A DNA stretch of 64,000 nucleotides from IMG/VR virus record IMGVR_UViG_3300036944_001324, positions 62,001 to 126,000 of that record; one strand, 5' to 3'. This document shows positions 1,793-60,372 of this stretch, in pieces (the first letter of the stretch is position 1; every line of letters starts with the position of its first letter). A program made the position numbers and the translations under genes. Under the pieces are notes generated by a model. The model was not told where the DNA came from and did no database searches. It saw only the letters and a program-made list of their open reading frames with translations.

Positions 1793-1974
1793 GGACAACC
1801 TTTGTTTTTGACTTGAAAAAGACTGACAACGCTTTTACAACCGTATTTGTATTGTTGGTTATATCAGTCAAATACTCCACAATTGTCTGAGGAGTGCGTG
1901 ATTCTGGAAGTTTCATGCCCCTGGACGGTTCTTTTTCTTTTCTCTCATCTTTTTTCCTTGCAAGGATTTTCCCG

Positions 1975-45736: not shown

Positions 45737-48700
45737 TTACGCCACGCGCCGCGTATCTACGATGGGTTCACTCACTTTACGAGGCCTGCGATCAGGCTGT
45801 GGTGATCCTGTTGAAGATGGAGCGGGTGGTGTTGCAGCTCCTGCGGTAGAAGCTGCTTCAGTTTGTTCACCTTGTTTGGCTATCATGAGATCCAAAATAC
45901 GCTGTTGGATATCACGCGACTCAATCAGGATTTTGTTAGTGTTACCGATACCATCAATGAGGTTCTTCTCATGGGTGCTGCGTGCACCCACTTCTGTATC
46001 CCGCGCATCTCGCTGCATGGCTGGTTGAACAGCCATCGGCATGAACGAAGGAGAACCAGAAGAAACTTGTCGCGGCTTAGGAGTCGTCTCTTCTTGCGAA
46101 GGACGGTACAGAGCGTTTTGCATGGTGGGTGCACCAGACTCAGAAGCAACACTCGTCGACGGGGAAGGTGTTGAAACACTTCCTGCCGAGTCATTGGCTG
46201 CTGGTGTAGTCGCCTTTGCCACCTGGGTAACGTTTCCTACATCGGGGGAGCCGATGCCGAACGCAGAAGCTGCTTTGGTCAGCTTGTTTTGCAGCAAAGT
46301 CATGATCTCTTGCTTCGTGCGTGGACGGCCACCATCGAAGAAGATCGACTTGTTAGCAGCCGCGGCTTCAGGCATTGCGTGAGCTGGCGTGACATTGTCA
46401 GCAAGACCCATGAAACGTCGACCACCGCCTGGGCCTAAGAAATGCAAGAGATAAGCACTCAGTGCATTCGCAGGCATGCCTGCCTTTTGTGCAGTCTGCA
46501 GATTTTGTTTCAAGTACAACGCACCCATGATGGCGTTGGCCTTAGGGTCGTTTGGAGAAGCATCGGCGGGAATGCCGTAGCTTGCACCATGCTTCTTGAC
46601 CATGTCGTTCCAAGTTCCCTTGGTAAACTGGTACAAACCCTTGGCGCTCGATGTTCCAGCAGCAGCGCCAGACTTGAAGCTGCTTTCAACAGCAACTGTT
46701 GTCTGGGCCAAGTTGGGATCAACACCCACTTGGGCAGCAGCATCCGCTACCAGCTTCTTCATGTCGGCAACTGAACTACCACCACCCTTGAGGTCTTGGT
46801 AGCCACCGCCCTTGCCTTCGTAGTTGTTCAGTGCGGTTTGAGCTTGGCCAGCTGGCGAACCTTTGAGCTTTGGAGAGCCTTCAAAGTCAGGCAGACTTCC
46901 ACCACCGGAGCCACCAATGCTTCCAGCAGAACCGGAAGCAGTAACTTCCGCACCGATCTGAGCAGCACCACCTGCGTAACCACCCTTGCCTGTCATGCTT
47001 GGCGTAGCGGCGGAGCGACTAGCATCTCCTTCGCGATCGCTCTTGATGGTCTCACCACCTGCATTGAACAAAGCCAAAGCGTGATCCGTGTTACGGCGAC
47101 CATGGGCGTACAGACCCTTAGCCCGACCAACACCACCACCGCCTTTACCGGGGGAGTGAGAAACAGCCATGGTTGCAGCCATGCCGTCTTTCTTGTACTT
47201 GTTGACGTTGTCTTGAATACCAGCTGGCTCGATGTGCCAAGGCTCACCACCGACGGGTCGGGTGAAACCATACTTGCGCATGAGACCAAGCTTATCAAGT
47301 GCGTTAGCGTCGATAGAGTTAATGTCAAAAGCCAGTCCGTACTCATGCAGGCTTGTACCTGGTCGAGCAGCGTTTTCTGGATTGTTCATGTACTCACGCT
47401 GTTGATCAGCGAATGAACGCATGCCGGCGTTCAGTTGTATCTTCTTACCTGTGATGGTTCCGTACTCTTCCACCATGCCTCGGAACAGCTTTACAGCCTC
47501 CGGGTTAGCTCCGTCGAGGGTTGCACCGCTATGATACTTGAGGAATGCCTCAGCACCGGAGCCGTTCATCAGGTCACCGCCAGCTACCTTGAGGGAGCCA
47601 GTCGATGGGGGTGCAGAAGTCTTTTCTGTTTTGGCAGGGCCGCCAGAACTACCAGCGTTTGCTTTAGCGTCCGATTCCATGTCTGGAAGAACGTTAGCTT
47701 GGTACGCTGGTTTGGCGCCAGCCATCTGGGGTGTGTCCGGACGATACACTGCACGCAGCATCTGCGGAGTTTGTGTAGGTGTCGTGCTAGCAGGTGAGGA
47801 TTTTACCTTCTCCTCTTGGATGGTCTGCTTTTCTGCACGTTCTTTCAAGAGTTCCACGAACGGCTTGATAGAGACCGTGGTTTCGCTCAGTGTGTAGCCT
47901 GGCCAAGGAGAAGCCGAGACTTTCATCACTTGGCTAGCGATGGCCATCATGGCGTTAGCCACTGCCTCGCTTTGGGTCGGTGTCAATGCAGCGTTAGCGG
48001 CTGCAAGATCTTTGGTTTGTGTGTGGAAACACGCCTGCGCGTAGAACGTCGTAAAGACAGGCAAGAAACGAGACTGGAACCAGGTTACCCAGTTATCCAC
48101 AGCCCGAGTGTTATCCTTATCGACACCAAACAAACCGTTGACAATCGTCAGTACTTTGCTAGGGTCACCCGTGAACGTAGCGACGCCCTCAGAGGACAGA
48201 TCGATTTGTTTTTGAACATGGGCTTCGAGACTGTTCAAAGAAGCCACCTTGTTAGGCTGTACGTCCATGATCCCGTACAGACGGAAACGAATCGATGCCA
48301 ATGCGTCGACGCTCTTGCTTGGCAAGGGTTCGATGTTGCTGGTGCTGTAAGTGATACCTTGACCGCCAAGAACAGAAACGTCTTTGGATGCGTCGTTCTT
48401 GTAAGCGTTCAGCTGGTTGTGCTGACTCTTCATGTCGACGTAGTCTTTCATGCCTGCCTTACCAGCGGCAGCTCCACCCTTGGATTGATCCTGGGCAGAT
48501 TTCAAGACGGCATCTACTTCTTTGCGTTTCATGTCGCCCTTGCTGGTTTCCAGCGCGAGCTTTTCCGTCTTGGAAGCCTTGGAAGCTTTTTCTTCCAGCA
48601 TCTTGCCAAGTACTTCTTTCATGTCGCGAATAGCTGCACCGTTAACGCTCAGGTCGTTACCAGAGCCGAACGGATTAGACAACTCGTCATGACCCTCGGA

Positions 48701-51700
48701 CACCGCAGTAACTGCTTTGAAGAAAGCCAGCTCATTGGAAGGTTTGAGGTTGTCAATGTCTGCCATCTTCTTGAGATCGGCGGTCTTTGCAGCCGCAGCA
48801 TGTTTCAAGAAGTTGGGTTTGAAGCGACGCTCGAGCCAACGCGAGAACGTTGCGAGCTGCTGTTCGTTATCAACGTCAATGCGAAAACGTGTTACGATTT
48901 CTTGGGCATCGATTTTGGATTCGTCGATAGAAGCTTTACCTTCATCGAGCTTGACGAATGGGAAGAGGTATTCTTCCAGCCACTGCAGAGTAGCAATAGG
49001 TCCGGTATCACCCATACCTACGCCGTACTCGGCCATCCGCAATGCACGCAGGTTGCCACTGCCCTTGGCTTTGACAGGTTCAGTGTTGTCACCCTTGACC
49101 AGATCGTAGAGTTCTTTCAAACCCCACACAGCACCAGCCACAGTCAATGCAGTCGCGACGATAGGTGCACCCAAAAGCGCAGCCACACCTGCCAGAGCAG
49201 GAATAGCAAGGCGTTTCAGAGCGAAGCCACCTACGGCCATCGCACCTCGGCCGAGACCAGCGGCGCCACCCATGCGTGCGCCGACTCCAGCAGCAGTGCG
49301 GACACCAGCCTTACCCCACGTACCGATTTTGGAAGCAGCACGGCTGAAGATACCTGGCTTACCACCAGGCTTACCACCCTTACCGCCTTTACCCCCTCCG
49401 CCTCCGAACATGTCAGCAATACCGCTGGCCAAACCAGCGAGCATCCCACCTTTACTGGTGAGGCTATTGATGATCATGTCGATGGTGTTCTCAGTACCCA
49501 TGGAGCCGGGCTTTTGAACATCGCTCAGGTCTTTGGTGGGTTCATTGATGTTGCGTTGTTTGTTCTTGAGATCCTGCCAAGAGTTATCACGCAGGCCATC
49601 GCCGTCTGTGTCACCCTTAGCACCGGCAGCGCCAGCCACAGCTGCTTTACCGGAATAACGTGCTTTAGCGTTATTGAACTTCTCTTTCGCGCCACCCATG
49701 AAGCGCTTGAACAGAGATTTGTTTTGTTTCTTGAGTTCGTCAATTTCTCGAGTGGTTTTCTCTTGACCGTCTTTAACGGCTTCTTTGACGTCAGCGGTGT
49801 CACCAGTTGCACCCGTACCACCCAGAGCGCCTAAGCCTTTGCGCTTAGAACGCCAGCGACTGAATGCGCTACCGATTGCAGAAGCTCCTGCGCCTACTGC
49901 CTTACCAGCAGCTGACAACAAGTTGGTTCCACCGTCGTAGTCGCGGTTCGTTGCAGGAGGTTCACCGGGTGCGGCAGGGCCATTGTTGTTTGTGTTGGGA
50001 GCGTCAGCTGCTTTAGCGATGGTCGCCAAAGGGCCACCAGAGGAGCTTTGTGGCAAACGAGAATCCAGGATGTCTCGAATTTGTTCCAGTACGGAATGGC
50101 TTTGTTCAGAGATCTGAATCTGAGAAGTAGCTTCTCCACCAGGACCACCGTTGTTACGGAAACCGCTCAACCCCTTAGTGACGAACGTTTTGGCTGCAGA
50201 ACCAATGCCACTGAGAACCTTCTTAGATTTCTTGGCAATCCAGGCAGTGGTGCGAACGGCAGAGACAGCGCGTTTGCGCATACCTTCGGCAATCTGCTGG
50301 GTAATAGTCTTGAATGGGTTGCCGTCTTCATCGACCAGACCTTTGACCAGATCTTCGATGCTGATCTTTGTTTCGTTGGTAGCGTCTACAACTTCGCCTT
50401 TGATCTTCGTTGGTCGATCAATCACTGAACCGTCGGACTTGTTGAGATAGCCACCGAGACGCATCACGTGAGCGTACAGTCGTGGTGTTGCCTCACCCTT
50501 GACGTAAACGTCGCGAGGAGGAATCAATACTTCTTTGAGGATGGCTTTGCCGAAGTTACCAACCATGCCGAGTTTGCGTTTGGCAAACAAAGCGGTTTGT
50601 CCGGTAACGTTCAGCAAACGACCAAGGCCTTTACCTGCGGCAGTCATGGCGCGCTGGACACGGTCAGCGAATACCCGTGCAAAGATCTTGGCGTTGCTCT
50701 TAACGTAAGCTTTCTTGAGCTCAGAAGGAGAAAGAATGTACTTGCCGTTTTCATCGAAGACACCTTCTACAGCGTCGGCGACGGCCATCAAGGTACTAAG
50801 GACCTTGCCTTTAGCGTCAAAGTAGGCGCCGGCTTGTAGGCCTTCCGACGTGATGCGGGGAGCCTTCTCATTACCAACAAAGAGTTCACCGATAACGGGG
50901 ATTCCGTCTTTGAGGTCCTGGAACATGCGAGCGCCAAAGAGGCGGCTCTTGGAAGCTTTGTCAGCGGCTTCTTCAACCACCTTCGAACCCACGCGCTTAC
51001 CCAGGCGGGCAACAGCTTTACCGCGGTTCCAACCACCACGCAGTTTGTCCTTGAACTTGCCAAGGTTCTCACCCATCGTGCTGTTCCAAAAGCCCTTGAC
51101 TTTGTCTTTGGCTTGGTCGGCGTAACCTGCGGCTTGTTCTGCAAACGCGTTGGCTTTCTCGGAAGCAGCTTTGCCAAAACCACCCATGCTAAAGCCACCA
51201 CCTGACTTGCCACCGCCGGAGCCACCGAAACCACCGCCACGCTCCATGCTTTCAGCGATCATGGACAGAACGCCGTACTGACGCTCTGCGATGTGAACCA
51301 GCTTTTGCAGGTTACCCATGCCTTTGGTGTCACCGAGCTCTTTGTCGATACGGTCTTGCAGGCCTTGGATGCCTGCCATCGCGATACCGTTCATGCTCGT
51401 GAGGTCGATCTTCTTGCCACCAGGGGCAGCTTCTTCACCGAACTCTTTGTTAACGTCCTGGGCCATCGGGCCGACCTTGGGTGACTGATCATCACTCTCG
51501 GTCTTTTTGTACTTCCAACGACTGATCGTGATCTTCTTGAGTTTCTCAAGAATAGATGCAGGATTCATTGGCTTGATACCGTCCTTGGCAAAGAAGTCGC
51601 TCTTGACGACCTTACCACCACCCAAGGCAGTTTCAATGATCTTGTCCAGGTCGATGTCAGACTGGTCCGCATCGAGTTCGTTGGCTTTGGTGAAGCCCAT

Positions 51701-53581
51701 CTCGTCCATGATGCTACCGTGACCTTCATTGAAAGCATTTTGAATAGCTGCTCGTGGATCTTTCAACCCACTCTTAGCCTCGCCCATGCTGTCGATGAAC
51801 TTGTTGCGTGCGCGCAAAGCTTTGCCAGTCCCGGAGAACTTGCCTGCTTCTTTGCTGTCGAAGAAAGCCTGCATGGCGCGTGCCACGGCTTCAGCTTCTT
51901 CTTTGGAGCCAGTGCCTTTCCAAAAGCCAGCTTCCGTCATCCGTTGGGGCGTCATAGAAGAGCCAGTGATCTGACCCTTGAGCAAAGAACGCTTGAGGCG
52001 CTCTTGTGCTTCTTGACTCAAGTCAGAACCAGAAGCGACTTCTGATACGAACTTGTCCATTGCACCGCCACTGCGCTGACCTTCCGAGAAGCGTTTGTTG
52101 TATTTCTTGATCAGATCGTCTTTGCTAGCAAAACCAGCTTTGTCGTGATCGTAGTACGTAAGGCCGATCTTGGTGTCACCCGTGCGTGCGATTTGCAGCT
52201 CTTGCAAGATCCGTGCAAGGTAGCCCGGCATCACCTCGGTGATAGAGCGCTTGTATGCGTTATCCAGTTCGGCTGGTTGCTTGAGGTTCTCCCCGCCCTT
52301 CTCTTTGGCAATACGTCGTTCGTTATTGCGGGCAGGCACCATCATCGAGGCAAGACCACGCAGAACCTGCATGGTGGTGCTCTCGTCCATCTCGCCACCG
52401 AATGCAAAGTCACGCAGCTCAGCGTCGCCGTTTTGCATGACGTTTTTAAGGGTGGAAGCACCCTTTTGAATCGCTCGATTGGCTTTGCGGTTACCGCGGG
52501 TGATCTTGCGGATCTTGCCGCCTGCGATGTCATCAAAGACACCCAGACCAAACTTGGTAGCACCTTCGGCGATCTGCCTGCGACGACGAACTGCTGGATC
52601 TTCATCATCAAGGTCCATGTCCATGTCAGAAGCCATGGTTGCCCCTTGGAGTCCCATGACAACATAGTCAGTCATTTCCTTGAGCGACTTGGCAAACTGG
52701 TTGCTCGCTGCTTGGAAGATGTTATCACCACCGGCACTGAACTTACCCAAGGCCTTGTCAACGAACTGGTTCTTCGCGTTGTTGACGAAGCGTTCAGTGA
52801 TACGGATCTTCTCAGACTCTGGAAGGCCGGTGTTGTGTCGGATCTGATCGAGCTGAGTACGGTTTTGTGCGATCAGCATGCGCAGCTGCTCGTTGGTATC
52901 CCTGATACCGAAGACCATGCGGTACTGCAGCTCCAGGCTCTTCTTTTGATAAGCCTGGGTAATACCTACCGTGTGCTTAGCGAGGATGTCGCTAGAGCGA
53001 GCGATAGTGTTGAGCAAGTTCGTATGCGTTTTGAAACGAACAAGCTCAGCGGTCTTTTCGATGTTGGCTTTGGCTTCGTCTTGCTCACGCTCATGTTGAC
53101 GTACATCGTCCTGAGCTGAAAACATCTGCTCCAAGGAAGCCGCAATGGCGCGATCTTCTTCGGCTTGTTTGTTGAACTTTTCAGCCTTGTAACCCCGAGT
53201 GTTTTCTTCAAGGTAGTCAACCAGCTTGAGCGTGCGGCGCATTTTCTGCGGAATCTTGTTACGAATCGACTTGGCGAATTCGTTAACAGGCTCGCGTGCA
53301 GTGTTCTTGAACTCGTTGACAGCATTCGCGATGGTGTCACGTGTTCCAGTATAGGTGTCGAAAGCTTCCCCGTATTCAGCAGGAAGAGCTTTACCCACCA
53401 GACGACGCAGAGTCTGCTCGTCAGAGTAGTGGGCTTTTGCAGCGGTGGCGATTCCTTTGCGGATCGTCTTGGCCGGGCTTCTGTCTTTCGGGTCAGTTTC
53501 CCCGAAGTCAAAGTCACCCATTCCGAAGTCCATATCATCGAACTCCGTAGGCCCGCGCTTGAGCCGATCAGATTTTATCAT
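45737..53581 (-). CDS. Tape-measure / virion lytic protein (phiKZ gp181-like) with internal S74-like domain, M15 peptidase and lytic transglycosylase
   Basis: 2614 aa, mostly helical and A/G/K-rich. SLT domain (AAQVGVDPNLAQTTVAVESSF...SAKGLYQFTKGTW) at about 46290-46760. M15 domain (NAGMRSFADQ...ARPGTSLHEYGLAFDI...GGEPWHI) at about 47225-47450. Next to the virion RNAP genes as in phiKZ. Confidence 0.88.
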   Translation of the reverse strand: MIKSDRLKRGPTEFDDMDFGMGDFDFGETDPKDRSPAKTIRKGIATAAKAHYSDEQTLRRLVGKALPAEYGEAFDTYTGTRDTIANAVNEFKNTAREPVNEFAKSIRNKIPQKMRRTLKLVDYLEENTRGYKAEKFNKQAEEDRAIAASLEQMFSAQDDVRQHEREQDEAKANIEKTAELVRFKTHTNLLNTIARSSDILAKHTVGITQAYQKKSLELQYRMVFGIRDTNEQLRMLIAQNRTQLDQIRHNTGLPESEKIRITERFVNNAKNQFVDKALGKFSAGGDNIFQAASNQFAKSLKEMTDYVVMGLQGATMASDMDMDLDDEDPAVRRRRQIAEGATKFGLGVFDDIAGGKIRKITRGNRKANRAIQKGASTLKNVMQNGDAELRDFAFGGEMDESTTMQVLRGLASMMVPARNNERRIAKEKGGENLKQPAELDNAYKRSITEVMPGYLARILQELQIARTGDTKIGLTYYDHDKAGFASKDDLIKKYNKRFSEGQRSGGAMDKFVSEVASGSDLSQEAQERLKRSLLKGQITGSSMTPQRMTEAGFWKGTGSKEEAEAVARAMQAFFDSKEAGKFSGTGKALRARNKFIDSMGEAKSGLKDPRAAIQNAFNEGHGSIMDEMGFTKANELDADQSDIDLDKIIETALGGGKVVKSDFFAKDGIKPMNPASILEKLKKITISRWKYKKTESDDQSPKVGPMAQDVNKEFGEEAAPGGKKIDLTSMNGIAMAGIQGLQDRIDKELGDTKGMGNLQKLVHIAERQYGVLSMIAESMERGGGFGGSGGGKSGGGFSMGGFGKAASEKANAFAEQAAGYADQAKDKVKGFWNSTMGENLGKFKDKLRGGWNRGKAVARLGKRVGSKVVEEAADKASKSRLFGARMFQDLKDGIPVIGELFVGNEKAPRITSEGLQAGAYFDAKGKVLSTLMAVADAVEGVFDENGKYILSPSELKKAYVKSNAKIFARVFADRVQRAMTAAGKGLGRLLNVTGQTALFAKRKLGMVGNFGKAILKEVLIPPRDVYVKGEATPRLYAHVMRLGGYLNKSDGSVIDRPTKIKGEVVDATNETKISIEDLVKGLVDEDGNPFKTITQQIAEGMRKRAVSAVRTTAWIAKKSKKVLSGIGSAAKTFVTKGLSGFRNNGGPGGEATSQIQISEQSHSVLEQIRDILDSRLPQSSSGGPLATIAKAADAPNTNNNGPAAPGEPPATNRDYDGGTNLLSAAGKAVGAGASAIGSAFSRWRSKRKGLGALGGTGATGDTADVKEAVKDGQEKTTREIDELKKQNKSLFKRFMGGAKEKFNNAKARYSGKAAVAGAAGAKGDTDGDGLRDNSWQDLKNKQRNINEPTKDLSDVQKPGSMGTENTIDMIINSLTSKGGMLAGLASGIADMFGGGGGKGGKGGKPGGKPGIFSRAASKIGTWGKAGVRTAAGVGARMGGAAGLGRGAMAVGGFALKRLAIPALAGVAALLGAPIVATALTVAGAVWGLKELYDLVKGDNTEPVKAKGSGNLRALRMAEYGVGMGDTGPIATLQWLEEYLFPFVKLDEGKASIDESKIDAQEIVTRFRIDVDNEQQLATFSRWLERRFKPNFLKHAAAAKTADLKKMADIDNLKPSNELAFFKAVTAVSEGHDELSNPFGSGNDLSVNGAAIRDMKEVLGKMLEEKASKASKTEKLALETSKGDMKRKEVDAVLKSAQDQSKGGAAAGKAGMKDYVDMKSQHNQLNAYKNDASKDVSVLGGQGITYSTSNIEPLPSKSVDALASIRFRLYGIMDVQPNKVASLNSLEAHVQKQIDLSSEGVATFTGDPSKVLTIVNGLFGVDKDNTRAVDNWVTWFQSRFLPVFTTFYAQACFHTQTKDLAAANAALTPTQSEAVANAMMAIASQVMKVSASPWPGYTLSETTVSIKPFVELLKERAEKQTIQEEKVKSSPASTTPTQTPQMLRAVYRPDTPQMAGAKPAYQANVLPDMESDAKANAGSSGGPAKTEKTSAPPSTGSLKVAGGDLMNGSGAEAFLKYHSGATLDGANPEAVKLFRGMVEEYGTITGKKIQLNAGMRSFADQQREYMNNPENAARPGTSLHEYGLAFDINSIDANALDKLGLMRKYGFTRPVGGEPWHIEPAGIQDNVNKYKKDGMAATMAVSHSPGKGGGGVGRAKGLYAHGRRNTDHALALFNAGGETIKSDREGDASRSAATPSMTGKGGYAGGAAQIGAEVTASGSAGSIGGSGGGSLPDFEGSPKLKGSPAGQAQTALNNYEGKGGGYQDLKGGGSSVADMKKLVADAAAQVGVDPNLAQTTVAVESSFKSGAAAGTSSAKGLYQFTKGTWNDMVKKHGASYGIPADASPNDPKANAIMGALYLKQNLQTAQKAGMPANALSAYLLHFLGPGGGRRFMGLADNVTPAHAMPEAAAANKSIFFDGGRPRTKQEIMTLLQNKLTKAASAFGIGSPDVGNVTQVAKATTPAANDSAGSVSTPSPSTSVASESGAPTMQNALYRPSQEETTPKPRQVSSGSPSFMPMAVQPAMQRDARDTEVGARSTHEKNLIDGIGNTNKILIESRDIQQRILDLMIAKQGEQTEAASTAGAATPPAPSSTGSPQPDRRPRKVSEPIVDTRRVA

Positions 53582-53848: not shown

Positions 53849-55852
53849 ATGTCTTCCAAAATTCCGTTTAACATCAAACTGCTACAGCTTGACGCTAAAG
53901 CTACGGTGGCGCTCAAACCTATCACAACGAACGACACGTTCGAAGGAGCCACCCGCAACTTTCACCCCAGTGGTTTGTTCTCAGTGAACATCTTTGGTCG
54001 TGTGGGTGATCCCTCACGGATGAAGAGTTTCGCCTACATCGACATCAAGGTACCGATCTTGCACCCCTTGGTGGTGCGGGTACTTGGCAAACTCAAACGC
54101 ATCTATCCTGAGATTCTCATGGGTAAGACCTACGCGGTCTGGGATGCAACACTCAAAGACTTCGTCAAAAGTGACATGCTCTCTGGTGAGACAGGTTATC
54201 ACTTCTTCATGCAGCACTTTGAGAAGATCCAGTTCCCGCAGCGCCTGTCCGATATTCGTGAACTGAACATCAAGTTCATCGAGAAGGTGCGTGGCGTGAA
54301 TGCGACGACTGAACGCATCATCGTTGCCCCGGCTGGTTTCCGTGACTTCATCATCCATGCGGATGACCGTGAAGAAGAAGACGAGGTCAATGCCCTGTAC
54401 CGCAAGATGCTGTCGGTCTCCAACCCGATCAGTCGCAGCGCTTTTGAAGCATCTCCCAAGACGTTCGATAAAGCACGCGCTTCCTTGCAATCGACCTTCA
54501 TCGAGATCTTCGAGTATTTCGAGAAAATGGTGGAAGGCAAGAACAAGCTTTTCATGGGTAAGTGGTTGACTCGTGAGATCGCTTACGGCACTCGTAACGT
54601 GATCACTACGCAGAACCTGCCTGTCAAGAAGCTCTTCGCCCCCGACTCACCCGGTTTCAACCACACGGGGATTGGCTTGTTCCAATACCTCAAAGCTTAC
54701 CAGCCTGTTTGTATTCACCAAGTTCGTGAAAACTTCATCTCCAAGGTGTTCACGACCCCGCAAGCTCCTGCGCTGCTGGTGAACATGAAGACGCTTCACA
54801 CCGAACGGGTGTTGGTGGACTCTGAACACTTCGACAGTTGGATGACACCTGAAGGCTTGGAGCGTATCTTCAACCTCTACGGTGAGGAAAGCGTTCGCCA
54901 TGAGCCTATCGTGATCGAAGGCCGCTACCTGGGTCTCATCTACAACGACGGCAAAGGCTTTAAGCTTTTCCAAGACATCGACGAGCTTCCAGAAGGTGCA
55001 GACCCTAAGTTCGTGAAACCCATCACGCTGTCTGAGCTGTTCTACATTGCCGTGTACCAATACACGGAAAACTACATCCTGAACGTTACCCGTTTTCCTG
55101 TGACGGGTTTTGGTTCGATCTATCCAAGCATCCCTTACCTGAAACCAACGATGGCGACGGTGAGTTTGCAACCGATGAACGATCAATGGGAGTTTGATGA
55201 GCAGCAACCTATTGCTTACAACTTCCCGGTCCGCGATAGTGCGTTCGTTAATACCCTGATGCCCGCACCAAACAAGCTCGGTGGGCTTAACGCCGACTTT
55301 GACGGGGACAAATGCACAGGCATGGGTATCTTCTCGCTGGAAGCTTGCGAAGAAGGTCGTCGCGTTCTGAAGAGCCGTAACTTCTACGTTCTCTCAAACG
55401 GCAAGATCGCCCACTCACTGAACACAGACACCGTCAAATACCTGATGCGCGGCCTTACCAGCAAGCCCCAGGCTTATCCGGTAACGGAAGCTTACCGGGA
55501 AGAAAATGACTCCACGTTCGAGCACTATGGTGAAGTGTTCAGCATCAACAAAGTGCACGAGATCATCGAGAAAAAGAAACTCGAGATTACTTATCTGAAT
55601 GCAAACAAGTCTTTGGCTTGGTTGCTCGATGTGCAAGACCGCAAAGGTCTGAAGTACGAAACGTTGGCTGATCCCGAACGGATCAAGAATGCGGATACCG
55701 AAACACCACTGATCGTGATCGATGACCCGCGCTGTGATTTGGTCGTGGCTGATGGTTTGCATCGGTTGGTCAAGGCTGTTCGTATTGAACACCGCACCAT
55801 GGTTCCTTGTTACGTCCTCAAATACTCGGACATTGCTTCCGCCCGTGTTTGA
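53849..55852 (+). CDS. rpoC: Virion RNA polymerase beta-prime catalytic subunit (phiKZ gp180-like) with C-terminal ParB/Srx-like domain
   Basis: HPSGLFSVNIFG, AYIDIKVPILHP, LNVTRFPVTG, and catalytic NADFDGD at 55289-55309. An extra ~120 aa carry PLIV...VVADGLHRLVKA. Confidence 0.9.
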   Translation: MSSKIPFNIKLLQLDAKATVALKPITTNDTFEGATRNFHPSGLFSVNIFGRVGDPSRMKSFAYIDIKVPILHPLVVRVLGKLKRIYPEILMGKTYAVWDATLKDFVKSDMLSGETGYHFFMQHFEKIQFPQRLSDIRELNIKFIEKVRGVNATTERIIVAPAGFRDFIIHADDREEEDEVNALYRKMLSVSNPISRSAFEASPKTFDKARASLQSTFIEIFEYFEKMVEGKNKLFMGKWLTREIAYGTRNVITTQNLPVKKLFAPDSPGFNHTGIGLFQYLKAYQPVCIHQVRENFISKVFTTPQAPALLVNMKTLHTERVLVDSEHFDSWMTPEGLERIFNLYGEESVRHEPIVIEGRYLGLIYNDGKGFKLFQDIDELPEGADPKFVKPITLSELFYIAVYQYTENYILNVTRFPVTGFGSIYPSIPYLKPTMATVSLQPMNDQWEFDEQQPIAYNFPVRDSAFVNTLMPAPNKLGGLNADFDGDKCTGMGIFSLEACEEGRRVLKSRNFYVLSNGKIAHSLNTDTVKYLMRGLTSKPQAYPVTEAYREENDSTFEHYGEVFSINKVHEIIEKKKLEITYLNANKSLAWLLDVQDRKGLKYETLADPERIKNADTETPLIVIDDPRCDLVVADGLHRLVKAVRIEHRTMVPCYVLKYSDIASARV

Positions 55853-55879
55853 GTCCCTTTTCCTTTTGTGAGTAACGAC

Positions 55880-56122
55880 ATGTCTGATACTCGTGTTTAT
55901 GTTCCTGCAGGTTCTGCGGGAGGCCACCCGGCTTTTGTGGAGCATGTTCCGTTGGGTCAAACCAATGCGAAGAACTTCGGCATTGCGGTTACTGCCCTTC
56001 GGCCCAACATCCCTGGCGTGGATCTGCGTCAAGTGCAAAGCGTCAACGGTGCAGCCGTTGACGTGGGTACTTCTGCAAACTACGTCGATATGAATCCCCG
56101 CACTCACGTGCTCAAGAAATGA
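55880..56122 (+). CDS. Small hypothetical protein between the two virion RNAP genes
   Basis: 80-84 aa; ATGA overlap with the beta subunit start. Confidence 0.6.
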   Translation: MSDTRVYVPAGSAGGHPAFVEHVPLGQTNAKNFGIAVTALRPNIPGVDLRQVQSVNGAAVDVGTSANYVDMNPRTHVLKK

Positions 56123-59100
56123 AACCATCTCAATCCATCGCGTCTTTGCTCGGTCGGGTAGATCCTTCTTTGGAAGTGATGATTACCCCCGAGCTGTTTC
56201 GCCGTCGTTTCGTTGTGTGGAAACCAGAACACCTGGTCATGCCACCAACACCGCTGATCAACCAGTTCGAGTTCCCCAACAACGCAGTCTATCACTACGT
56301 TGTCATGGACGGCATCCAAGAGGGCCCAAGCCCTACGGATGTGAAGCTCGCGACGATCGATAAAAAGATCACCATCGAAGCAGTCCGTCAGCTCACAAGC
56401 TCTGAAGGTAAACCAGCCCCGATTGCTGTCAACATCCAGTCGTCTGTTGACGCCTGGCACCGGTACAACAAACGTTTTCGCAAATCGCGCGATGCGGTGG
56501 CAGAAGCTCCTAGCGAGCAGACACTGGCCATCATCAACTACGCGTTCTTGCCGCAGCTGTACCGCTACACCCGCTCGATCTACACGGATCGGTATCGCTG
56601 GGTGAATACCTGGGCCACTGTGTTCAACAAGATCAATGAGATCTCCCAGACCACCACCCGCACGAACTTCATCTTCGTGGACATGCCGCAGCAACTACCG
56701 TCCATGCAGCGTCTGGAAGCGCTGACAGACAAACCTGATGCAATGATCGTGCGTACGCTTCCAACTCCAGAAGACTGGATGCTCTACGAACTGTGGAAAT
56801 GGGTTGATCCTGAAAAGCGTGGTACTAGCTTGCTCAACCGGATCGATCCACTGCACTACGACAAGGTCCGACTGGTGATCCAAGACGCTGGTCGTTTCAT
56901 CTGCTTGGACTTGGGTCTTTTGAACCAATGGCTGCGCGATCCGACGGGTTCGAAAGAATCTACCGGACGTCTGAAGCCAGTCGAGTTGCAAAAGCGTCTG
57001 CTGCGCGGCTTGATGGGGTTGATGCAAAATCGTGTTCCAGTCATTCTTGACGAGAACACTGGCGATATCGATCAAACAGCCATCGATGCACAACAGCAAC
57101 AAAACGATGCTTCTACATCGACTAACGTGGGTGACACGGAGACCACTGCGCAACGGGTTGAGCGTATCCTGGCCGAGCTCGATGACGACATCGCTCAACT
57201 GGACACGAACGACGCGCAGCGGATGAAGATGCTGGAAGAAGGCGCCATCAGTGCTTCACAACCGGCTTCCGTAGAAACTACGGAAGAAGTGAGCTTTGAC
57301 AAACCAGTTACGCCTGTTGACATGATCCGCAAGCAAGCGGACAACCTGGACAACATGGGTGTACTCGCACCGTCCGAGTACCGCAAGATCTTGCGTTTGC
57401 TTGATAACGGTCAGAAACTCAAAGACCCCTTCGGCGGTGACAAGACGCTGGTGGAGTTCGGTACGGTCACTCCTGATGAGACGCTCATCAAGAATGTTCA
57501 CCAGTTGCCTGACTCGGTAACAATCATCGACAAGAGCATGCGTGAGGCATCGCTCAAGGATTTCGACAGCAAGTACATCGATCAGTTCCTGCGACGCGAT
57601 ACCGTCGGATGCGTTGCCGCCATGCAAAAAGCAGGGATGATCATCTCTGACTATCAGGTAGAGGTCAACGAAGACGCTCTTGGTAAGTACGAACTTCACT
57701 CCGTTCGTTTCTCTCCACTGGTAGGCCTTCCTACCACGTTGCGCTTTAAGCTCCCTGTTCCGGACTCGTCTGGCAAGATCAAGAGCGGCGGTACGGATTA
57801 CCGTTTCCGCAAACAGCGTGTGGACGCCCCCATCCGCAAGATCTCAGCTTCCCGTGTGGCTATCTCTAGCTACTATGGCAAGAGCTTTGTGTCCCGTTCT
57901 GAACGCAGTACCTACGACTACGGCCGCTGGTTGCAACGTGAAGTCATGGTGCAGGTCATGGGTGAGAACCCAACCATCACCAACATCAAAACAGGTGACG
58001 TGTTCTACCGCGAATGCACAGGACCTCGTTCGTTCACGGCGATGTCTGAGCGCTATCGTGAGTTCACCTTCCAAGGCATCAACTTCAATTTTGATTGGAG
58101 CAAGCAAAAGGAAATCTTCGGTGATGAAGCTATTGCCGAAGCCAAGACTCAAAACCTGACCCTCTGCGGTAAAGACGCCAATGCTCTTTACGCAGTGGAT
58201 GTGAACAACACGCTGTACAAGGTGGAGCCTGGTAATTCCACACCTGTGGAGTCCTTTGAAGTGTTCCTTGGTCTGGAAGCTTTGCGTGCTCCCTTGGAGT
58301 TCACGGAATGCCGCATCATGGGCAAGAACATTCCCACTGGTGTTGTACTGGCTTACTACTACGGCCTGAGCACGCTGATCAAGATGCTGGGTGCATCGGT
58401 GCGACGTGTTGGCGCTGGGCAGCGTCAGAACCTGCAACCCAACGAATGGTCGGTAGCCTTCGAAGATGAAACTCTCATCTTCAACCGTGACGATCGTCTG
58501 GCCACGCTGATCTTGGCTGGTTTCCGCTCGGTTGAAAAGAGCACCAAGCGTTACTCGATCTACGCTTTCGACAAGCAAGCCGTATACCTGAACGTTCTTG
58601 AGCAGCAAGGTCTGTCCGTTCGTTACCTGCGTGAACTCGACAACCTGGACAAGCTCTTCGTTGATCCGATCACCGAACGCGTTCTCAAACGCATGGGTGA
58701 GCCTACAACCTACCGTGGCCTTATCAAGCGTGCATCTGAGATGCTGCTCCTTGACGAGCATCCCCGTTTGCTTGACGTCCGTTACATGCGCTGGCGCGGT
58801 ATGGAGCGTATCGCAGGTAGCGTCTACACTGAGATGGTGCGTTCTGTGCGTGAGCATGGTTCTTTGGCCGGTCGTAGCAACGCCCATTTGAAGCTGAACG
58901 TCTACAGTGTCTGGAAAGCCGTGATGCAGGATCAGTCCATGACACAAGTCAAGGACATCAATCCCATCAACGACCTCAAGGAAATCGAAGCCACGACCTA
59001 CGCAGGTGCTGGTGGTCGCTCCAGCCGTTCGCTCACACGCTCTGCACGTTACTTCGATCCAACTGACCTGGGTGTTACCTCGGAAGCCACCTCGGACTCC

Positions 59101-60372
59101 AAGGACGTTGCTATCAACACCTACACCAGTGCCTCGCCTCGCTTTGACAGCCTGGAAGGTACGGTCATGGAGCCCTTGTACGAGAATACACCAGCGACCA
59201 GTATTCTCTCCACATCCGCCCTAGTATCCCCGTTCTCCACAAACGAGGACGGAAAAAGAACAAACTTTATCTCAGTTCAGCAAGGTCATGGCATCCCTTG
59301 CGATAACTACAAAGTCTCTCCGGTGCGAACTGGGTTTGAAGAAACCATCGCACACAAAGTCGGTGAGAACTTCGCTGCAGCAGCCAAGATGAACGGTAAA
59401 GTGACGCGTGTACGTCCTAACGGTATCTTGGTACAGTACGCCGATGGTAGTACTCAAGGTTTTGAAATTGGTCGTCGTTTTGGTAATGCCTCCGGTATGA
59501 CCATCCCGCACGATCTTGTCTCCAACTTCAAAGAAGGCGACAGTTTCAATGCTGGTGACGTACTGACCTATCACAAGGGCTTCTTCAAGCCCGATCGTTT
59601 CAACCCCAGTCAAGTGCGCTGGATGAACGGTACGATCTGCACAGTTGCTCTTTTGGAGAGCCGTCAGACCCACGAAGACGCTTGCTCTTTGTCTTCCAAG
59701 TTCGCAGGATCGTTCGGAACTCGCATGACAGCAGTCAAGCGGGTTGTCGTGAACTTTGACCAACAAGTCCACAGTTTGGTGAATGTTGGTGATCACGTGA
59801 GTTACTCGAGCAGCCTGTGTGTTATCGAGGACTCCATCGGAACAGATACGTCGCTTTTTACGGACGAGACGCTCAATACTTTGAAAGCCCTCTCGGGGCA
59901 GTCTCCTCGCGCTAAAGTGACAGGACGCGTGGACAATATCGAAGTCTTCTATCATGGGGACAAAGAAGATATGTCCGAAAGTCTTCGCTCGTTGGCCGAT
60001 GTCAGTGATCGCCGCATGGCTGATCGCAGGCGTTCTGTTGGTAAGGCTGTCTTTACAGGGCAAGTGGATGAAGGCTATCGCATCGAAGGGGAACCTTTGC
60101 TGCTTGACACGGCAGTGATCGTTGTCTACATTACCCACACTGTCGGTGCGGGTGTGGGCGACAAGTTCGTGTTCGGTAATCAGCTCAAGACCGTTGTATC
60201 TGAAGTTATGGATTATCCCGTGACTGCCAAGAACGGTATTGAAATTGATGCCATCTTCGGCGCCAAGTCCATCTTCGATCGGATTGTGCCTAGCCCATTC
60301 CTCATCGGAACCACTACCACTTTACTCGGCATCATCGGCAAAAACACTGCCAAAATCTTCAAGGGAAATTAA
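56119..60372 (+). CDS. rpoB: Virion RNA polymerase beta subunit, N-terminal/middle part (phiKZ gp178-like)
   Basis: 1417 aa; GGRSSRS, DLGVTSEATSDSKDVA, EDGKRTNFISVQQGH, HEDACSLS, GDKFVFGNQLKTVV, IDAIFGAKSIFDRIV are RNAP beta conserved blocks. Confidence 0.9.
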   Translation: MKPSQSIASLLGRVDPSLEVMITPELFRRRFVVWKPEHLVMPPTPLINQFEFPNNAVYHYVVMDGIQEGPSPTDVKLATIDKKITIEAVRQLTSSEGKPAPIAVNIQSSVDAWHRYNKRFRKSRDAVAEAPSEQTLAIINYAFLPQLYRYTRSIYTDRYRWVNTWATVFNKINEISQTTTRTNFIFVDMPQQLPSMQRLEALTDKPDAMIVRTLPTPEDWMLYELWKWVDPEKRGTSLLNRIDPLHYDKVRLVIQDAGRFICLDLGLLNQWLRDPTGSKESTGRLKPVELQKRLLRGLMGLMQNRVPVILDENTGDIDQTAIDAQQQQNDASTSTNVGDTETTAQRVERILAELDDDIAQLDTNDAQRMKMLEEGAISASQPASVETTEEVSFDKPVTPVDMIRKQADNLDNMGVLAPSEYRKILRLLDNGQKLKDPFGGDKTLVEFGTVTPDETLIKNVHQLPDSVTIIDKSMREASLKDFDSKYIDQFLRRDTVGCVAAMQKAGMIISDYQVEVNEDALGKYELHSVRFSPLVGLPTTLRFKLPVPDSSGKIKSGGTDYRFRKQRVDAPIRKISASRVAISSYYGKSFVSRSERSTYDYGRWLQREVMVQVMGENPTITNIKTGDVFYRECTGPRSFTAMSERYREFTFQGINFNFDWSKQKEIFGDEAIAEAKTQNLTLCGKDANALYAVDVNNTLYKVEPGNSTPVESFEVFLGLEALRAPLEFTECRIMGKNIPTGVVLAYYYGLSTLIKMLGASVRRVGAGQRQNLQPNEWSVAFEDETLIFNRDDRLATLILAGFRSVEKSTKRYSIYAFDKQAVYLNVLEQQGLSVRYLRELDNLDKLFVDPITERVLKRMGEPTTYRGLIKRASEMLLLDEHPRLLDVRYMRWRGMERIAGSVYTEMVRSVREHGSLAGRSNAHLKLNVYSVWKAVMQDQSMTQVKDINPINDLKEIEATTYAGAGGRSSRSLTRSARYFDPTDLGVTSEATSDSKDVAINTYTSASPRFDSLEGTVMEPLYENTPATSILSTSALVSPFSTNEDGKRTNFISVQQGHGIPCDNYKVSPVRTGFEETIAHKVGENFAAAAKMNGKVTRVRPNGILVQYADGSTQGFEIGRRFGNASGMTIPHDLVSNFKEGDSFNAGDVLTYHKGFFKPDRFNPSQVRWMNGTICTVALLESRQTHEDACSLSSKFAGSFGTRMTAVKRVVVNFDQQVHSLVNVGDHVSYSSSLCVIEDSIGTDTSLFTDETLNTLKALSGQSPRAKVTGRVDNIEVFYHGDKEDMSESLRSLADVSDRRMADRRRSVGKAVFTGQVDEGYRIEGEPLLLDTAVIVVYITHTVGAGVGDKFVFGNQLKTVVSEVMDYPVTAKNGIEIDAIFGAKSIFDRIVPSPFLIGTTTTLLGIIGKNTAKIFKGN

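What the first reader, a model, noticed from the sequence alone, without database searches (positions are those of the whole stretch)
55480..55852. Virion RNAP catalytic beta-prime subunit fused to a ParB/Sulfiredoxin-like domain
Seen: about 60 aa after NADFDGD the frame continues without a stop into ~120 extra aa, FEHYGEVFSINKV...LAWLL...ERIKNADTETPLIVIDD...LVVADGLHRLVKAVRIEHRTMVPCYVL, containing the ParB/Srx hallmark P-h-h-V...hhDGxHRh (DGLHRL at 55751-55768). The junction reads PVTE/AYREE, similar to the GAE/AYNE capsid maturation site. Established: ParB/Srx domains bind NTPs (CTP in ParB clamps, ATP in Srx); phiKZ gp180 is, as I recall, about 550 aa without such a tail. Inference: either a nucleotide-sensing or DNA-clamping module on the injected RNAP, or a passenger protein packaged by fusion and released by the prohead protease.
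Basis: partly seen in the sequence, partly recalled or inferred. Interest (0 to 1): 0.72.

Follow-up and report, generated by a model that had tools for sequence, protein, structure and literature searches.

The report
Injected phage RNA polymerase carrying ParB/Srx-like domain
A giant phage's virion-packaged RNA polymerase catalytic subunit really does end in a small ParB/sulfiredoxin-type nucleotide-binding domain. The same domain family is found in other phages as a free head-associated protein or fused to other proteins that are packaged and injected, so it is most likely an accessory enzyme delivered with the polymerase. Its activity is unknown.

Summary
ORF 53849-55852 (+, 667 aa) is the vRNAP beta'-N subunit (phiKZ gp180 family, aa 4-537, NADFDGD at aa 481-487). 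It runs without a stop into a 120-aa domain (aa 549-667).

- **Not an artefact.** Four independent metagenome assemblies span the junction with no indels and mostly synonymous changes. Eight related genes carry the same fusion, including cultured Ralstonia phages RP12, RP31 and FLC4-3B.
- **ParB/Srx fold.** A family profile hits SbnI at E 5e-6. An unbiased structure search of 48,161 chains returns almost only ParB/Srx proteins.
- **Not canonical ParB or Srx.** It has no HTH, no dimerisation domain, no GERRxRA motif and no catalytic Cys.
- **Family context (PHROG 17560).** Most members are free 105-145 aa phage proteins. Others are fused to portal, MuF, ART, NUDIX or pyrophosphatase domains, and one is inserted into vRNAP beta'-C.
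- **Probably uncleaved.** Published RP31 virion proteomics finds the fused orthologue at 74 kDa (75.2 predicted).

Best reading: a virion-delivered accessory nucleotide-dependent domain tethered to the injected polymerase. The fusion is unreported in the papers read but present in deposited genomes. Interest is moderate.

The parts
53849..55852 (+). Whole gene: vRNAP beta'-N subunit fused to a ParB/Srx-like C-terminal domain (667 aa, 76.2 kDa; stop at 55850-55852)
   Evidence: continuity confirmed in independent assemblies
53858..55459 (+). beta'-N module (aa 4-537), homologous to phiKZ gp180 / RP12 ORF42
   Evidence: PHROG 2986 E 3e-188; tblastn to 310 phage records; subunit table in PMC5468394
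55289..55309 (+). NADFDGD catalytic Mg-binding motif (aa 481-487)
   Evidence: direct reading
55466..55498 (+). Linker (aa 540-550), predicted disordered. It holds the PVTE-A junction; Glu547 is invariant in all 8 fused relatives
   Evidence: pLDDT under 50 for model residues 1-11; junction comparison
55493..55849 (+). ParB/Srx-fold domain of the PHROG 17560 family (aa 549-667). It has a family-specific N-terminal beta-hairpin (Y-x-E...S-T-F-x-H-x-G) followed by the ParB/Srx core
   Evidence: PHROG 17560 E 1e-16; AF2 model pLDDT 86; fold searches; profile hit to SbnI E 4.8e-6
55751..55768 (+). DGLHRL motif (aa 635-640). D, G and H are each 99% conserved and R is invariant in the family. It aligns with DGVHR of SbnI
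55679..55720 (+). Second conserved block, R611...A615-D616...P620 (99%, 91%, 91% and 98% conserved), leading into the central strand
56119..60372 (+). Next gene: vRNAP beta-N-like subunit (1417 aa). Conserved synteny partner
   Evidence: PHROG 3148 E 0; same order in RP12, FLC9, RSF1, OBP and PA7
45737..53581 (-). Divergent upstream gene: 2614-aa virion protein with tail-fibre-like, endolysin and transglycosylase regions. Conserved synteny partner, context only
   Evidence: PHROGs 3201, 4067 and 13118; RP31 ORF40 homologue detected in virions

Best explanation
The gene encodes the catalytic beta'-N subunit of the virion-packaged multisubunit RNA polymerase. An accessory domain is permanently tethered to its C-terminus, exactly at the beta' split site, through a disordered linker of about 10 residues.

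The accessory domain belongs to a phage family (PHROG 17560) of minimal ParB/Srx-fold domains. They keep the superfamily's phosphate-binding strand-helix motif (D-G-x-H-R) plus R611, D616 and W591, but have no DNA-binding or dimerisation modules. Members of this family are delivered inside capsids in three ways:
- as small free proteins encoded among head genes;
- fused to portal or MuF 'polyvalent' ejection proteins, next to nucleotide-handling domains;
- as here, riding on the vRNAP.

Because it is fused, the domain would be packaged at the polymerase's own copy number (about 10 per phiKZ virion), ejected with the genome, and placed next to the incoming DNA and the first transcription complexes.

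*Shown:* the fusion is real and under purifying selection, the fold and motif, the family's architectures and gene contexts, and virion presence of the full-length orthologue.

*Inferred:* the domain binds an NTP and hydrolyses it or transfers its phosphate. It then acts as an early-infection accessory enzyme on nucleotides or nucleic acid rather than as a core part of the polymerase.
For: **Fusion real and conserved**
- no indels; 12 synonymous against 4 replacement changes.
- eight fused relatives at 41-81% identity.
- the fused genes lie in one 99/97-supported beta'-N clade, and a single origin is not rejected (p-AU 0.23).

**Fold**
- SbnI E 4.8e-6, aligned over DGVHR.
- 10 of the 11 chains with Z>=2 out of 48,161 are ParB/Srx proteins; top is Srx at Z 6.4.
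- Searches agree.
- a family member hits Pfam ParBc_2 above its cut-off.
- all family-invariant residues are intact in the window.

**Cargo pattern**
- fusions to portal+InPase, MuF (three times), cytidylyltransferase+ART-PolyVal, NUDIX and peptidase C39.
- PA5oct gp343 is an MS-detected virion protein.
- free copies lie among internal-head-protein genes.
- free copies lie just downstream of the major head protein gene.
- the same domain is inserted in vRNAP beta'-C of another phage.

**Stays attached**
- RP31 ORF39 is 75.2 kDa predicted and 74 kDa observed, with 26 peptides (PMC5468394 Table S3).

**gp180 can carry a passenger into virions and cells**
- mCherry-gp180 is packaged and injected (PMC10612078).

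**Precedent**
- An HD phosphohydrolase domain sits on AR9-type vRNAP (PMC7598289).
Against: - No biochemical activity is known for any member of this family.
- Pfam has no model for it.
- Foldseek E-values and TM-scores to solved structures are weak (0.05; 0.3-0.4). The assignment rests on how exclusive the hits are and on the profile match.
- Two separate fusions to the two beta' halves could instead mean a polymerase-specific role.
- The junction keeps an S/A/G-x-E-like site in 6 of 8 relatives, so some processing is possible.
- The RP31 gel masses are coarse.
- The tail is acidic (pI 5.6), which does not favour a nuclease or DNA-binding activity.
Confidence: 0.55

Rival explanations
1. Passenger released by the prohead protease. 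The domain is fused only so that it gets packaged, and is cut off at xxE (after Glu547) during head maturation to become a free internal head or ejection protein.
For: The linker is predicted disordered. Glu at -2 from the domain's first Tyr is invariant in all 8 fused versions, and the P3 residue is A or S in 6 of them, matching the S/A/G-x-E specificity I recall for phiKZ-type proteases. A similar E-AY-x-E string occurs at aa 159-163 of the major head protein (window 2362-2376). Free-standing family members sit among internal head protein genes.
Against: The RP31 fused orthologue was found in virions at 74 kDa against 75.2 kDa predicted. A cleaved beta'-N would be about 61 kDa. Glu at -2 is also the commonest residue in free-standing members (32 of 90), so it is a family feature. 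The window itself has Val at P3. The motif carries little information.
Confidence: 0.2
2. Integral regulatory module of the polymerase. An NTP-gated (ATP or CTP) switch on beta' controls early transcription, promoter escape, or retention of vRNAP on the phage genome during packaging and ejection.
For: The domain has joined vRNAP beta' twice in different ways: at the C-terminus of beta'-N here, and as a loop insertion between residues about 149 and 158 of beta'-C in P0108. The fusion has been retained across divergence down to 41% identity. The phosphate-binding motif is intact.
Against: - Most vRNAPs lack it, including FLC9 and RSF1 inside the same clade, and those genomes show no copy elsewhere.
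- Most family members are free proteins or are fused to portal or MuF.
- PA5oct carries the domain in a virion protein and, as I recall (not checked here), has no vRNAP.
- Modelling the tail against the phage's own beta'-C gave no answer.
Confidence: 0.15
3. Non-enzymatic packaging or structural adaptor. The domain binds a head-interior component or the DNA end and serves to recruit its carrier into the capsid.
For: It is consistently associated with head genes and head proteins.
Against: Near-absolute conservation of D-G-x-H-R, R611 and D616 across about 100 diverse members is typical of a ligand-binding or catalytic site. vRNAPs without the domain are packaged normally. MuF and portal fusions place it among cargo domains.
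Confidence: 0.1
4. Artefact: a lost stop codon, a frameshift or an assembly chimera joins two separate genes.
For: In many phages the domain is a separate small gene.
Against: Independent assemblies agree base for base on the frame. The substitution pattern is that of a translated sequence. Eight relatives, including three cultured, published phages, share the fusion. No free-standing copy lies next to beta'-N in any unfused relative.
Confidence: 0.02

Closest known systems
phiKZ gp180 / Ralstonia phage RP12 ORF42 (vRNAP beta'-N subunit)
   Same: PHROG 2986 over the full profile, the NADFDGD motif, and gene order (giant lytic virion protein | beta'-N | beta-N). RP12, RP31 and FLC4-3B share the very same C-terminal domain (41% identity overall).
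   Different: phiKZ-type, OBP, Eowyn, Proteus phage 10, Xoo-sp14, FLC9 and RSF1 orthologues end at 507-551 aa with no tail. In the RP12-type records the tail is annotated only as part of the beta' subunit.
SbnI / SerK free serine kinases (ParB/Srx fold)
   Same: They are the best sequence-profile match (E 4.8e-6). The D-G-x-H-R motif aligns with DGVHR, and the core fold is shared (Z 4.7-5.9).
   Different: SbnI and SerK have a second domain of about 150 aa that the tail lacks. The tail has its own N-terminal beta-hairpin extension. Kinase activity is untested.
Sulfiredoxin
   Same: It is the best structural match (Z 6.4, 79-84 aligned residues), a single-domain protein of similar size, with the H-R of the ATP-binding motif.
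   Different: The catalytic Cys of the FGGCHR motif is Leu637 here and is not conserved as Cys in the family. Nothing links the tail to peroxiredoxin.
Canonical ParB / Noc / KorB CTP-dependent clamps
   Same: The N-terminal nucleotide-binding fold is shared (Foldseek probability up to 0.98 against AlphaFold models; Z about 5-6).
   Different: The tail has no GERRxRA box, no HTH, no C-terminal dimerisation domain and no ParA or parS context. It is acidic.
DdrB-like ParB domains of polyvalent proteins (Iyer et al. 2017, PMC5512222)
   Same: Both are ParB/Srx-superfamily domains found solo or in multidomain proteins of phages, next to virion genes, and proposed to be packaged and injected. Partner domains are the same (MuF, portal, ART-PolyVal, InPase).
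   Different: No Pfam ParB-type model hits the tail or 97 free-standing relatives. The conserved motifs differ, so it appears to be a separate family. Fusion to a multisubunit vRNAP is not mentioned in the passages of that paper that my term search returned.
HD phosphohydrolase domain on the vRNAP beta-C subunit of Bacillus jumbo phages AR9/PBS1
   Same: It is an accessory nucleotide or nucleic-acid hydrolase-type domain fused to a subunit of a jumbo-phage virion RNAP, of unknown role (PMC7598289, PMC7824862).
   Different: The fold, the subunit, the terminus and the phage lineage are all different.

Membership tests
Jumbo-phage vRNAP beta'-N (phiKZ gp180 family) | Full-length homology to the family, including the NADFDGD Mg-binding motif | tested here: met
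   PHROG 2986 E 3e-188, profile 5-538 of 539; NADFDGD at aa 481-487
Jumbo-phage vRNAP beta'-N (phiKZ gp180 family) | It is the virion rather than the non-virion paralogue: synteny with beta-N and the giant lytic protein, and presence in virions | tested here: met
   Synteny is identical to RP12 ORF43/42/41, OBP and PA7. The RP31 orthologue ORF39 was detected in virions. Virion presence of this phage's own protein was not tested.
ParB/Srx superfamily (fold level) | Alpha/beta core fold of the ParB N-domain / sulfiredoxin | tested here: met
   The model has pLDDT 86. In the unbiased VIA search, 10 of the 11 chains with Z>=2 are ParB/Srx proteins, top Z 6.4. The top 50 Foldseek hits are all from the superfamily. 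The Atlas search gives TM 0.74 to a ParB/Srx cluster. The scores themselves are middling.
ParB/Srx superfamily (fold level) | Conserved Arg-containing phosphate-binding motif at the strand-helix junction | tested here: met
   D635, G636 and H638 are each 99% conserved and R639 is invariant. The motif aligns with DGVHR of SbnI.
ParB/Srx superfamily (fold level) | Binds or hydrolyses a nucleotide | not testable with these tools
   Needs binding and NTPase assays
Canonical ParB (CTP-dependent partition clamp) | GERRxRA CTP-binding box | tested here: not met
   The motif is VADGLHRL, with no GERR
Canonical ParB (CTP-dependent partition clamp) | HTH DNA-binding domain and C-terminal dimerisation domain | tested here: not met
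   The protein ends 27 aa after the DGLHRL motif (aa 635-640). No Pfam HTH_ParB or ParB_C hit. The family is 105-145 aa long.
Sulfiredoxin | Catalytic Cys in the F-G-G-C-H-R motif | tested here: not met
   Leu637 occupies that position, and it is variable in the family
SbnI/SerK serine kinases | Two-domain architecture with a C-terminal substrate-binding domain | tested here: not met
   The match covers only the N-domain, SbnI residues 28-85. The tail has nothing beyond it.
PHROG 17560 (phage minimal ParB/Srx-like domain) | Significant profile match and the family signature Y-x-E / S-T-F-x-H-x-G / W / R..AD...P / D-G-x-H-R | tested here: met
   E 1e-16. All signature residues are present except that the 91%-conserved Tyr is Phe564.
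Polyvalent / virion-delivered effector domains (Iyer et al. 2017) | The same domain recurs in multidomain proteins with MuF, portal and other effector domains, and solo next to virion genes | tested here: met
   gene contexts
Polyvalent / virion-delivered effector domains (Iyer et al. 2017) | Ejected into the host with the DNA and acts early | not testable with these tools
   Only indirect support: vRNAP must be injected, and mCherry-gp180 is injected in phiKZ
DdrB-like ParB (Pfam ParB-type models) | Sequence match to curated ParB-type Pfam models | tested here: not met
   No Pfam hit at E<=1 for the tail, and none at E<=0.01 among the 97 free-standing relatives. Only one paralogous copy, in P0031, hits ParBc_2.

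The most novel reading that the evidence does not exclude
The ParB/Srx module is a nucleotide-gated switch physically coupled to the catalytic subunit of an injected multisubunit RNA polymerase. For example, a CTP- or ATP-dependent latch could hold vRNAP on the phage genome in the capsid and release or activate it once cellular NTPs are met on ejection. The beta'-N tail and the beta'-C loop insertion would then be two routes to the same position on the enzyme.
Probability: 0.12. Interest if true: 0.8.

Novelty: new variant of a known kind. Interest (0 to 1): 0.5.

Why it matters
How jumbo phages package their virion polymerase, eject it and start transcription inside the early infection compartment is poorly understood. 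The function of accessory domains on these enzymes is unknown; the HD domain of AR9 is the only one noted in the reviews read here.

This finding defines a second accessory module, an intact nucleotide-binding ParB/Srx domain. It occurs in cultured, tractable phages (RP12, RP31, FLC4-3B), so the role can be tested directly.

It also links the vRNAP to the wider logic of virion-delivered 'polyvalent' effector domains. And it flags an uncurated but widespread phage ParB/Srx family (at least 150 clusters at 50% identity) whose chemistry is unknown.

Tried and rejected
- **Pfam** on the whole protein, the tail and 97 family members gave no ParB-type hit.
- **IMG/VR scan** with peptide patterns from the protein found no close relatives.
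- **Word-indexed protein search** found only close fused relatives.
- **P0005**, the nearest free-standing homologue, has its DNA withheld, so its context is unknown.
- **Domain tree of 157 sequences.** It is too short to resolve and cannot say whether the RNAP-fused tails share one origin. I used the beta'-N tree instead.
- **Complex prediction of the tail with the phage's own beta'-C.** This was meant to test whether the two architectures place the domain at one site. It gave no answer (score 0.00) and counts as no evidence either way.
- **P0007 as a split version of the gene.** It looked like one but is exon 2 of a fused gene interrupted by a group I intron.
- **Xoo-sp14 as a fused orthologue.** The apparent match to aa 621 is read-through of the alignment. 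Its gene is 550 aa, and its ParB-like gene lies elsewhere in the genome.
- **Charge.** The tail is acidic and the family is near neutral, so there is no support for non-specific DNA binding.
- **Prior descriptions.** Term searches in two jumbo-phage RNAP and genomics reviews and in the RP12/RP31 paper found no mention of ParB.
Full report
**1. The observation**

The window lies in a 271,654-bp, 99%-complete IMG/VR virus record. ORF 53849-55852 (+) encodes 667 aa.
- Residues 4-537 match the jumbo-phage beta'-N family (PHROG 2986) over its whole 539-position profile at E 3e-188.
- Residues 547-651 match a second, unrelated family, PHROG 17560 ('unknown function', 119 positions), at E 1e-16.
- NADFDGD is aa 481-487 (nt 55289-55309).
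- Pfam recognises neither part.

**2. Is the fusion real?**

Yes, on three lines of evidence.

*Independent assemblies.* Near-identical sequence occurs in many unrelated metagenomes: shale gas, groundwater, wastewater, biofilm, soil and chicken gut. Contigs from four of them span the junction, tail and stop with no insertion or deletion. Of the 16 listed substitutions in aa 545-667, 12 are synonymous and 4 are replacements (H559L, I580V, V595A, H648R). None creates a stop. That is the pattern of a translated sequence under purifying selection.

*Relatives.* The same architecture is found in:
- P0002 (81% identity);
- fragments P0003 and P0004;
- P0033 on contig L010 (54% identity, with a further 135 unassigned residues);
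- contig L011;
- the cultured Ralstonia phages RP12, RP31, FLC4-3B and FLC1-1B (about 41% identity; 664-671 aa).

*Unfused relatives.* Their genes stop at 507-551 aa and abut the next polymerase gene directly, with no small gene in between: FLC9 542, RSF1 538, Xoo-sp14 550, Proteus phage 10 543, Eowyn 540, OBP 518 and Phikzvirus PA7 551.

Only the RP12-type group among 310 phage records with a beta'-N homologue carries the tail.

In a beta'-N tree the fused genes fall in one well-supported clade (99/97) together with unfused FLC9 and RSF1. A single origin of the fusion is not rejected (p-AU 0.23). The fusion is therefore old and was retained while the carrier diverged to 41% identity. It was either lost once or gained twice.

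**3. What the tail is**

An exhaustive HMMER search found 150 cluster representatives at E<1e-3. Most are free proteins of 105-145 aa.

An alignment of the tail with 97 of them shows a compact signature:
- Y549 (92%) and E551 (96%);
- S555, G561 and W591 (95%);
- R611 (99%), A615-D616 and P620 (98%);
- D635, G636 and H638 (each 99%) and R639 (invariant);
- K642-A643.

The window keeps all of these. The one departure elsewhere in the signature is Phe564, where 91% of members have Tyr.

A profile of this alignment hits three distinct SbnI sequences (best E 4.8e-6), aligned through DGVHR, and *H. pylori* ParB at E 0.12.

The AlphaFold model has pLDDT 86, with residues 540-550 disordered. Structure searches gave:
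- Foldseek against PDB: 50 top hits, all ParB/Srx proteins (PadC, Srx, ParB, Noc, SbnI, KorB, Atu1540, SerK), but with weak scores (E 0.05, TM 0.3-0.4).
- Against Swiss-Prot models: ParB, Noc, SbnI and Srx, with probability up to 0.98.
- An aligner that does not depend on Foldseek, run over 48,161 chains: only 11 with Z>=2. Ten are ParB/Srx proteins, led by sulfiredoxin at Z 6.4 and SerK at 5.7.
- The ESM Atlas: TM 0.74 to a 'ParB/Srx family N-terminal domain' cluster.

One paralogous copy in P0031 passes Pfam's ParBc_2 cut-off.

I take the fold assignment as secure (about 0.9). Membership in any characterised subfamily fails:
- no GERRxRA, HTH or dimerisation domain, so it is not a ParB clamp;
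- Leu in place of the Srx cysteine;
- no second domain as in SbnI and SerK.

The tail is also acidic (pI 5.6; family median 6.8).

**4. Where the family occurs**

This is the most informative result.

*Free copies sit in head-gene neighbourhoods:*
- between internal-head-protein genes in Psa21 and RVTF4;
- immediately downstream of the major head protein gene on two contigs.

*Fused copies:*
- In PA5oct the domain is the C-terminus of gp343, annotated as a structural protein detected by ESI-MS/MS.
- It is fused to portal plus inorganic pyrophosphatase (P0089), to MuF (P0088, P0021, P0061), to cytidylyltransferase plus ART-PolyVal (P0023), to NUDIX (P0026) and to peptidase C39 (P0072).

These are the hallmark architectures of the 'polyvalent proteins' that Iyer et al. 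argue are packaged and injected with the DNA (PMC5512222). That paper describes a different ParB family (DdrB-like) in the same role.

*A second vRNAP fusion.* P0108 is a vRNAP beta'-C subunit (the phiKZ gp80 / RP12 ORF258 family, 48% identical to this phage's own beta'-C). It has the domain cleanly inserted between own-beta'-C residues about 149 and 158.

*Where it is absent.* FLC9 and RSF1 show no hit to the domain anywhere in their genomes. PA5oct, which carries it in a virion protein, has no vRNAP as I recall (not checked here). The domain's function therefore does not seem to require the polymerase, and the polymerase does not require it.

**5. Tethered or released?**

The junction strings in the eight fused genes all have Glu two residues before the domain's first Tyr. 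Six have A or S at the position three before the cut. That resembles the S/A/G-x-E specificity I recall for phiKZ-type prohead proteases. It also resembles GAE-AYNE at aa 157-163 of the major head protein (window 2362-2376).

Three points weigh against release:
- Glu at that position is the commonest residue in free-standing members as well (32 of 90).
- The window has Val at P3.
- Published gel-slice MS of RP31 virions found the fused orthologue ORF39 at 74 kDa against 75.2 kDa theoretical, with 26 peptides and 41% coverage (PMC5468394 Table S3). A cleaved carrier would run at about 61 kDa.

The gel masses are coarse, so I leave cleavage at about 0.2.

phiKZ gp180 is known to tolerate a passenger. 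mCherry-gp180 assembles into vRNAP, is packaged at roughly 7-10 copies per virion and is injected (PMC10612078).

**6. Mechanism proposed**

The domain is an accessory, nucleotide-dependent module that this phage lineage delivers by tethering it to the injected polymerase's catalytic subunit at the beta' split site.
- *Shown:* architecture, conservation, fold, motif integrity, family contexts, and virion presence of the orthologue.
- *Inferred:* NTP binding, hydrolysis or phosphotransfer, and action at the incoming genome early in infection.

The frequent nucleotide-handling partner domains (pyrophosphatase, NUDIX, nucleotidyltransferase, ART) point to nucleotide chemistry more than to DNA clamping.

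The main rival is a polymerase-specific regulatory switch. It is kept alive by the two independent beta' fusions. Complex modelling to test co-location gave no answer.

**7. Novelty**

The fold family in phages, virion-delivered ParB-type domains, and accessory domains on vRNAP (HD in AR9; PMC7598289) are all known kinds.

The specific ParB/Srx-on-beta' architecture sits unremarked in deposited genomes. Term searches in the RP12/RP31 paper and the two reviews found no mention of ParB. I rate it a new variant of a known kind, of moderate interest. It is directly testable in cultured Ralstonia phages.

Noticed in passing
L011:2084-2468 (metagenomic relative; gene L011:659-3011): A group I intron (Rfam RF00028, 57.6 bits, E 4e-13) interrupts the fused beta'-N gene inside the catalytic motif. 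Exon 1 ends ...GADF and exon 2 resumes DGD... Gene callers therefore split it into a 486-aa and a 148-aa protein (P0007).
   Followed up: yes
L019:2048-2386 (Xanthomonas phage LucasX, MW825358.1): A second group I intron (RF00028, 56.8 bits) lies at the same region of the beta'-N gene, just after the NADFDGD region. The GenBank record shows a truncated 507-aa CDS followed by a 360-bp gap and a 50-aa ORF, so the gene is probably mis-annotated.
   Followed up: partly
P0108 / L009:383-2017: In another metagenomic phage, the vRNAP beta'-C subunit carries the same ParB/Srx-like domain as an insertion of about 115 aa, between residues corresponding to about 149 and 158 of this phage's beta'-C (G000:C1:194407-195717). 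The contig is only 2 kb, so whether that phage's beta'-N also carries a tail is unknown.
   Followed up: partly
P0033 aa 666-798 (L010:7451-9847): The 54%-identical fused orthologue has a further extension of about 135 aa after the ParB/Srx-like domain, with no PHROG or Pfam match.
   Followed up: partly
window 1894-4116 (+), motif at 2362-2376: This is the major head protein (PHROG 3231, E 7e-155).
   Followed up: partly
window 54900-56200: This phage, or strains at least about 95% identical to it, occurs in metagenomes from very different places: shale gas, groundwater, wastewater, biofilm, soil and chicken gut. The host is unknown. The nearest cultured relatives infect Ralstonia and Burkholderia.
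   Followed up: no
window 55524 (aa 559): The biofilm-metagenome strain (run X4) has His559 replaced by Leu, at a position that is His in 72% of family members (the F-x-H-x-G hairpin). This suggests the residue is not essential.
   Followed up: no
L003:4001-4324 and L006:4001-4351 (Psa21 gp219, RVTF4 XDJ14847): The annotated starts of these free-standing family members begin at profile position 20, while the tblastn match starts about 40-60 nt upstream. The deposited start codons are probably too far downstream.
   Followed up: no
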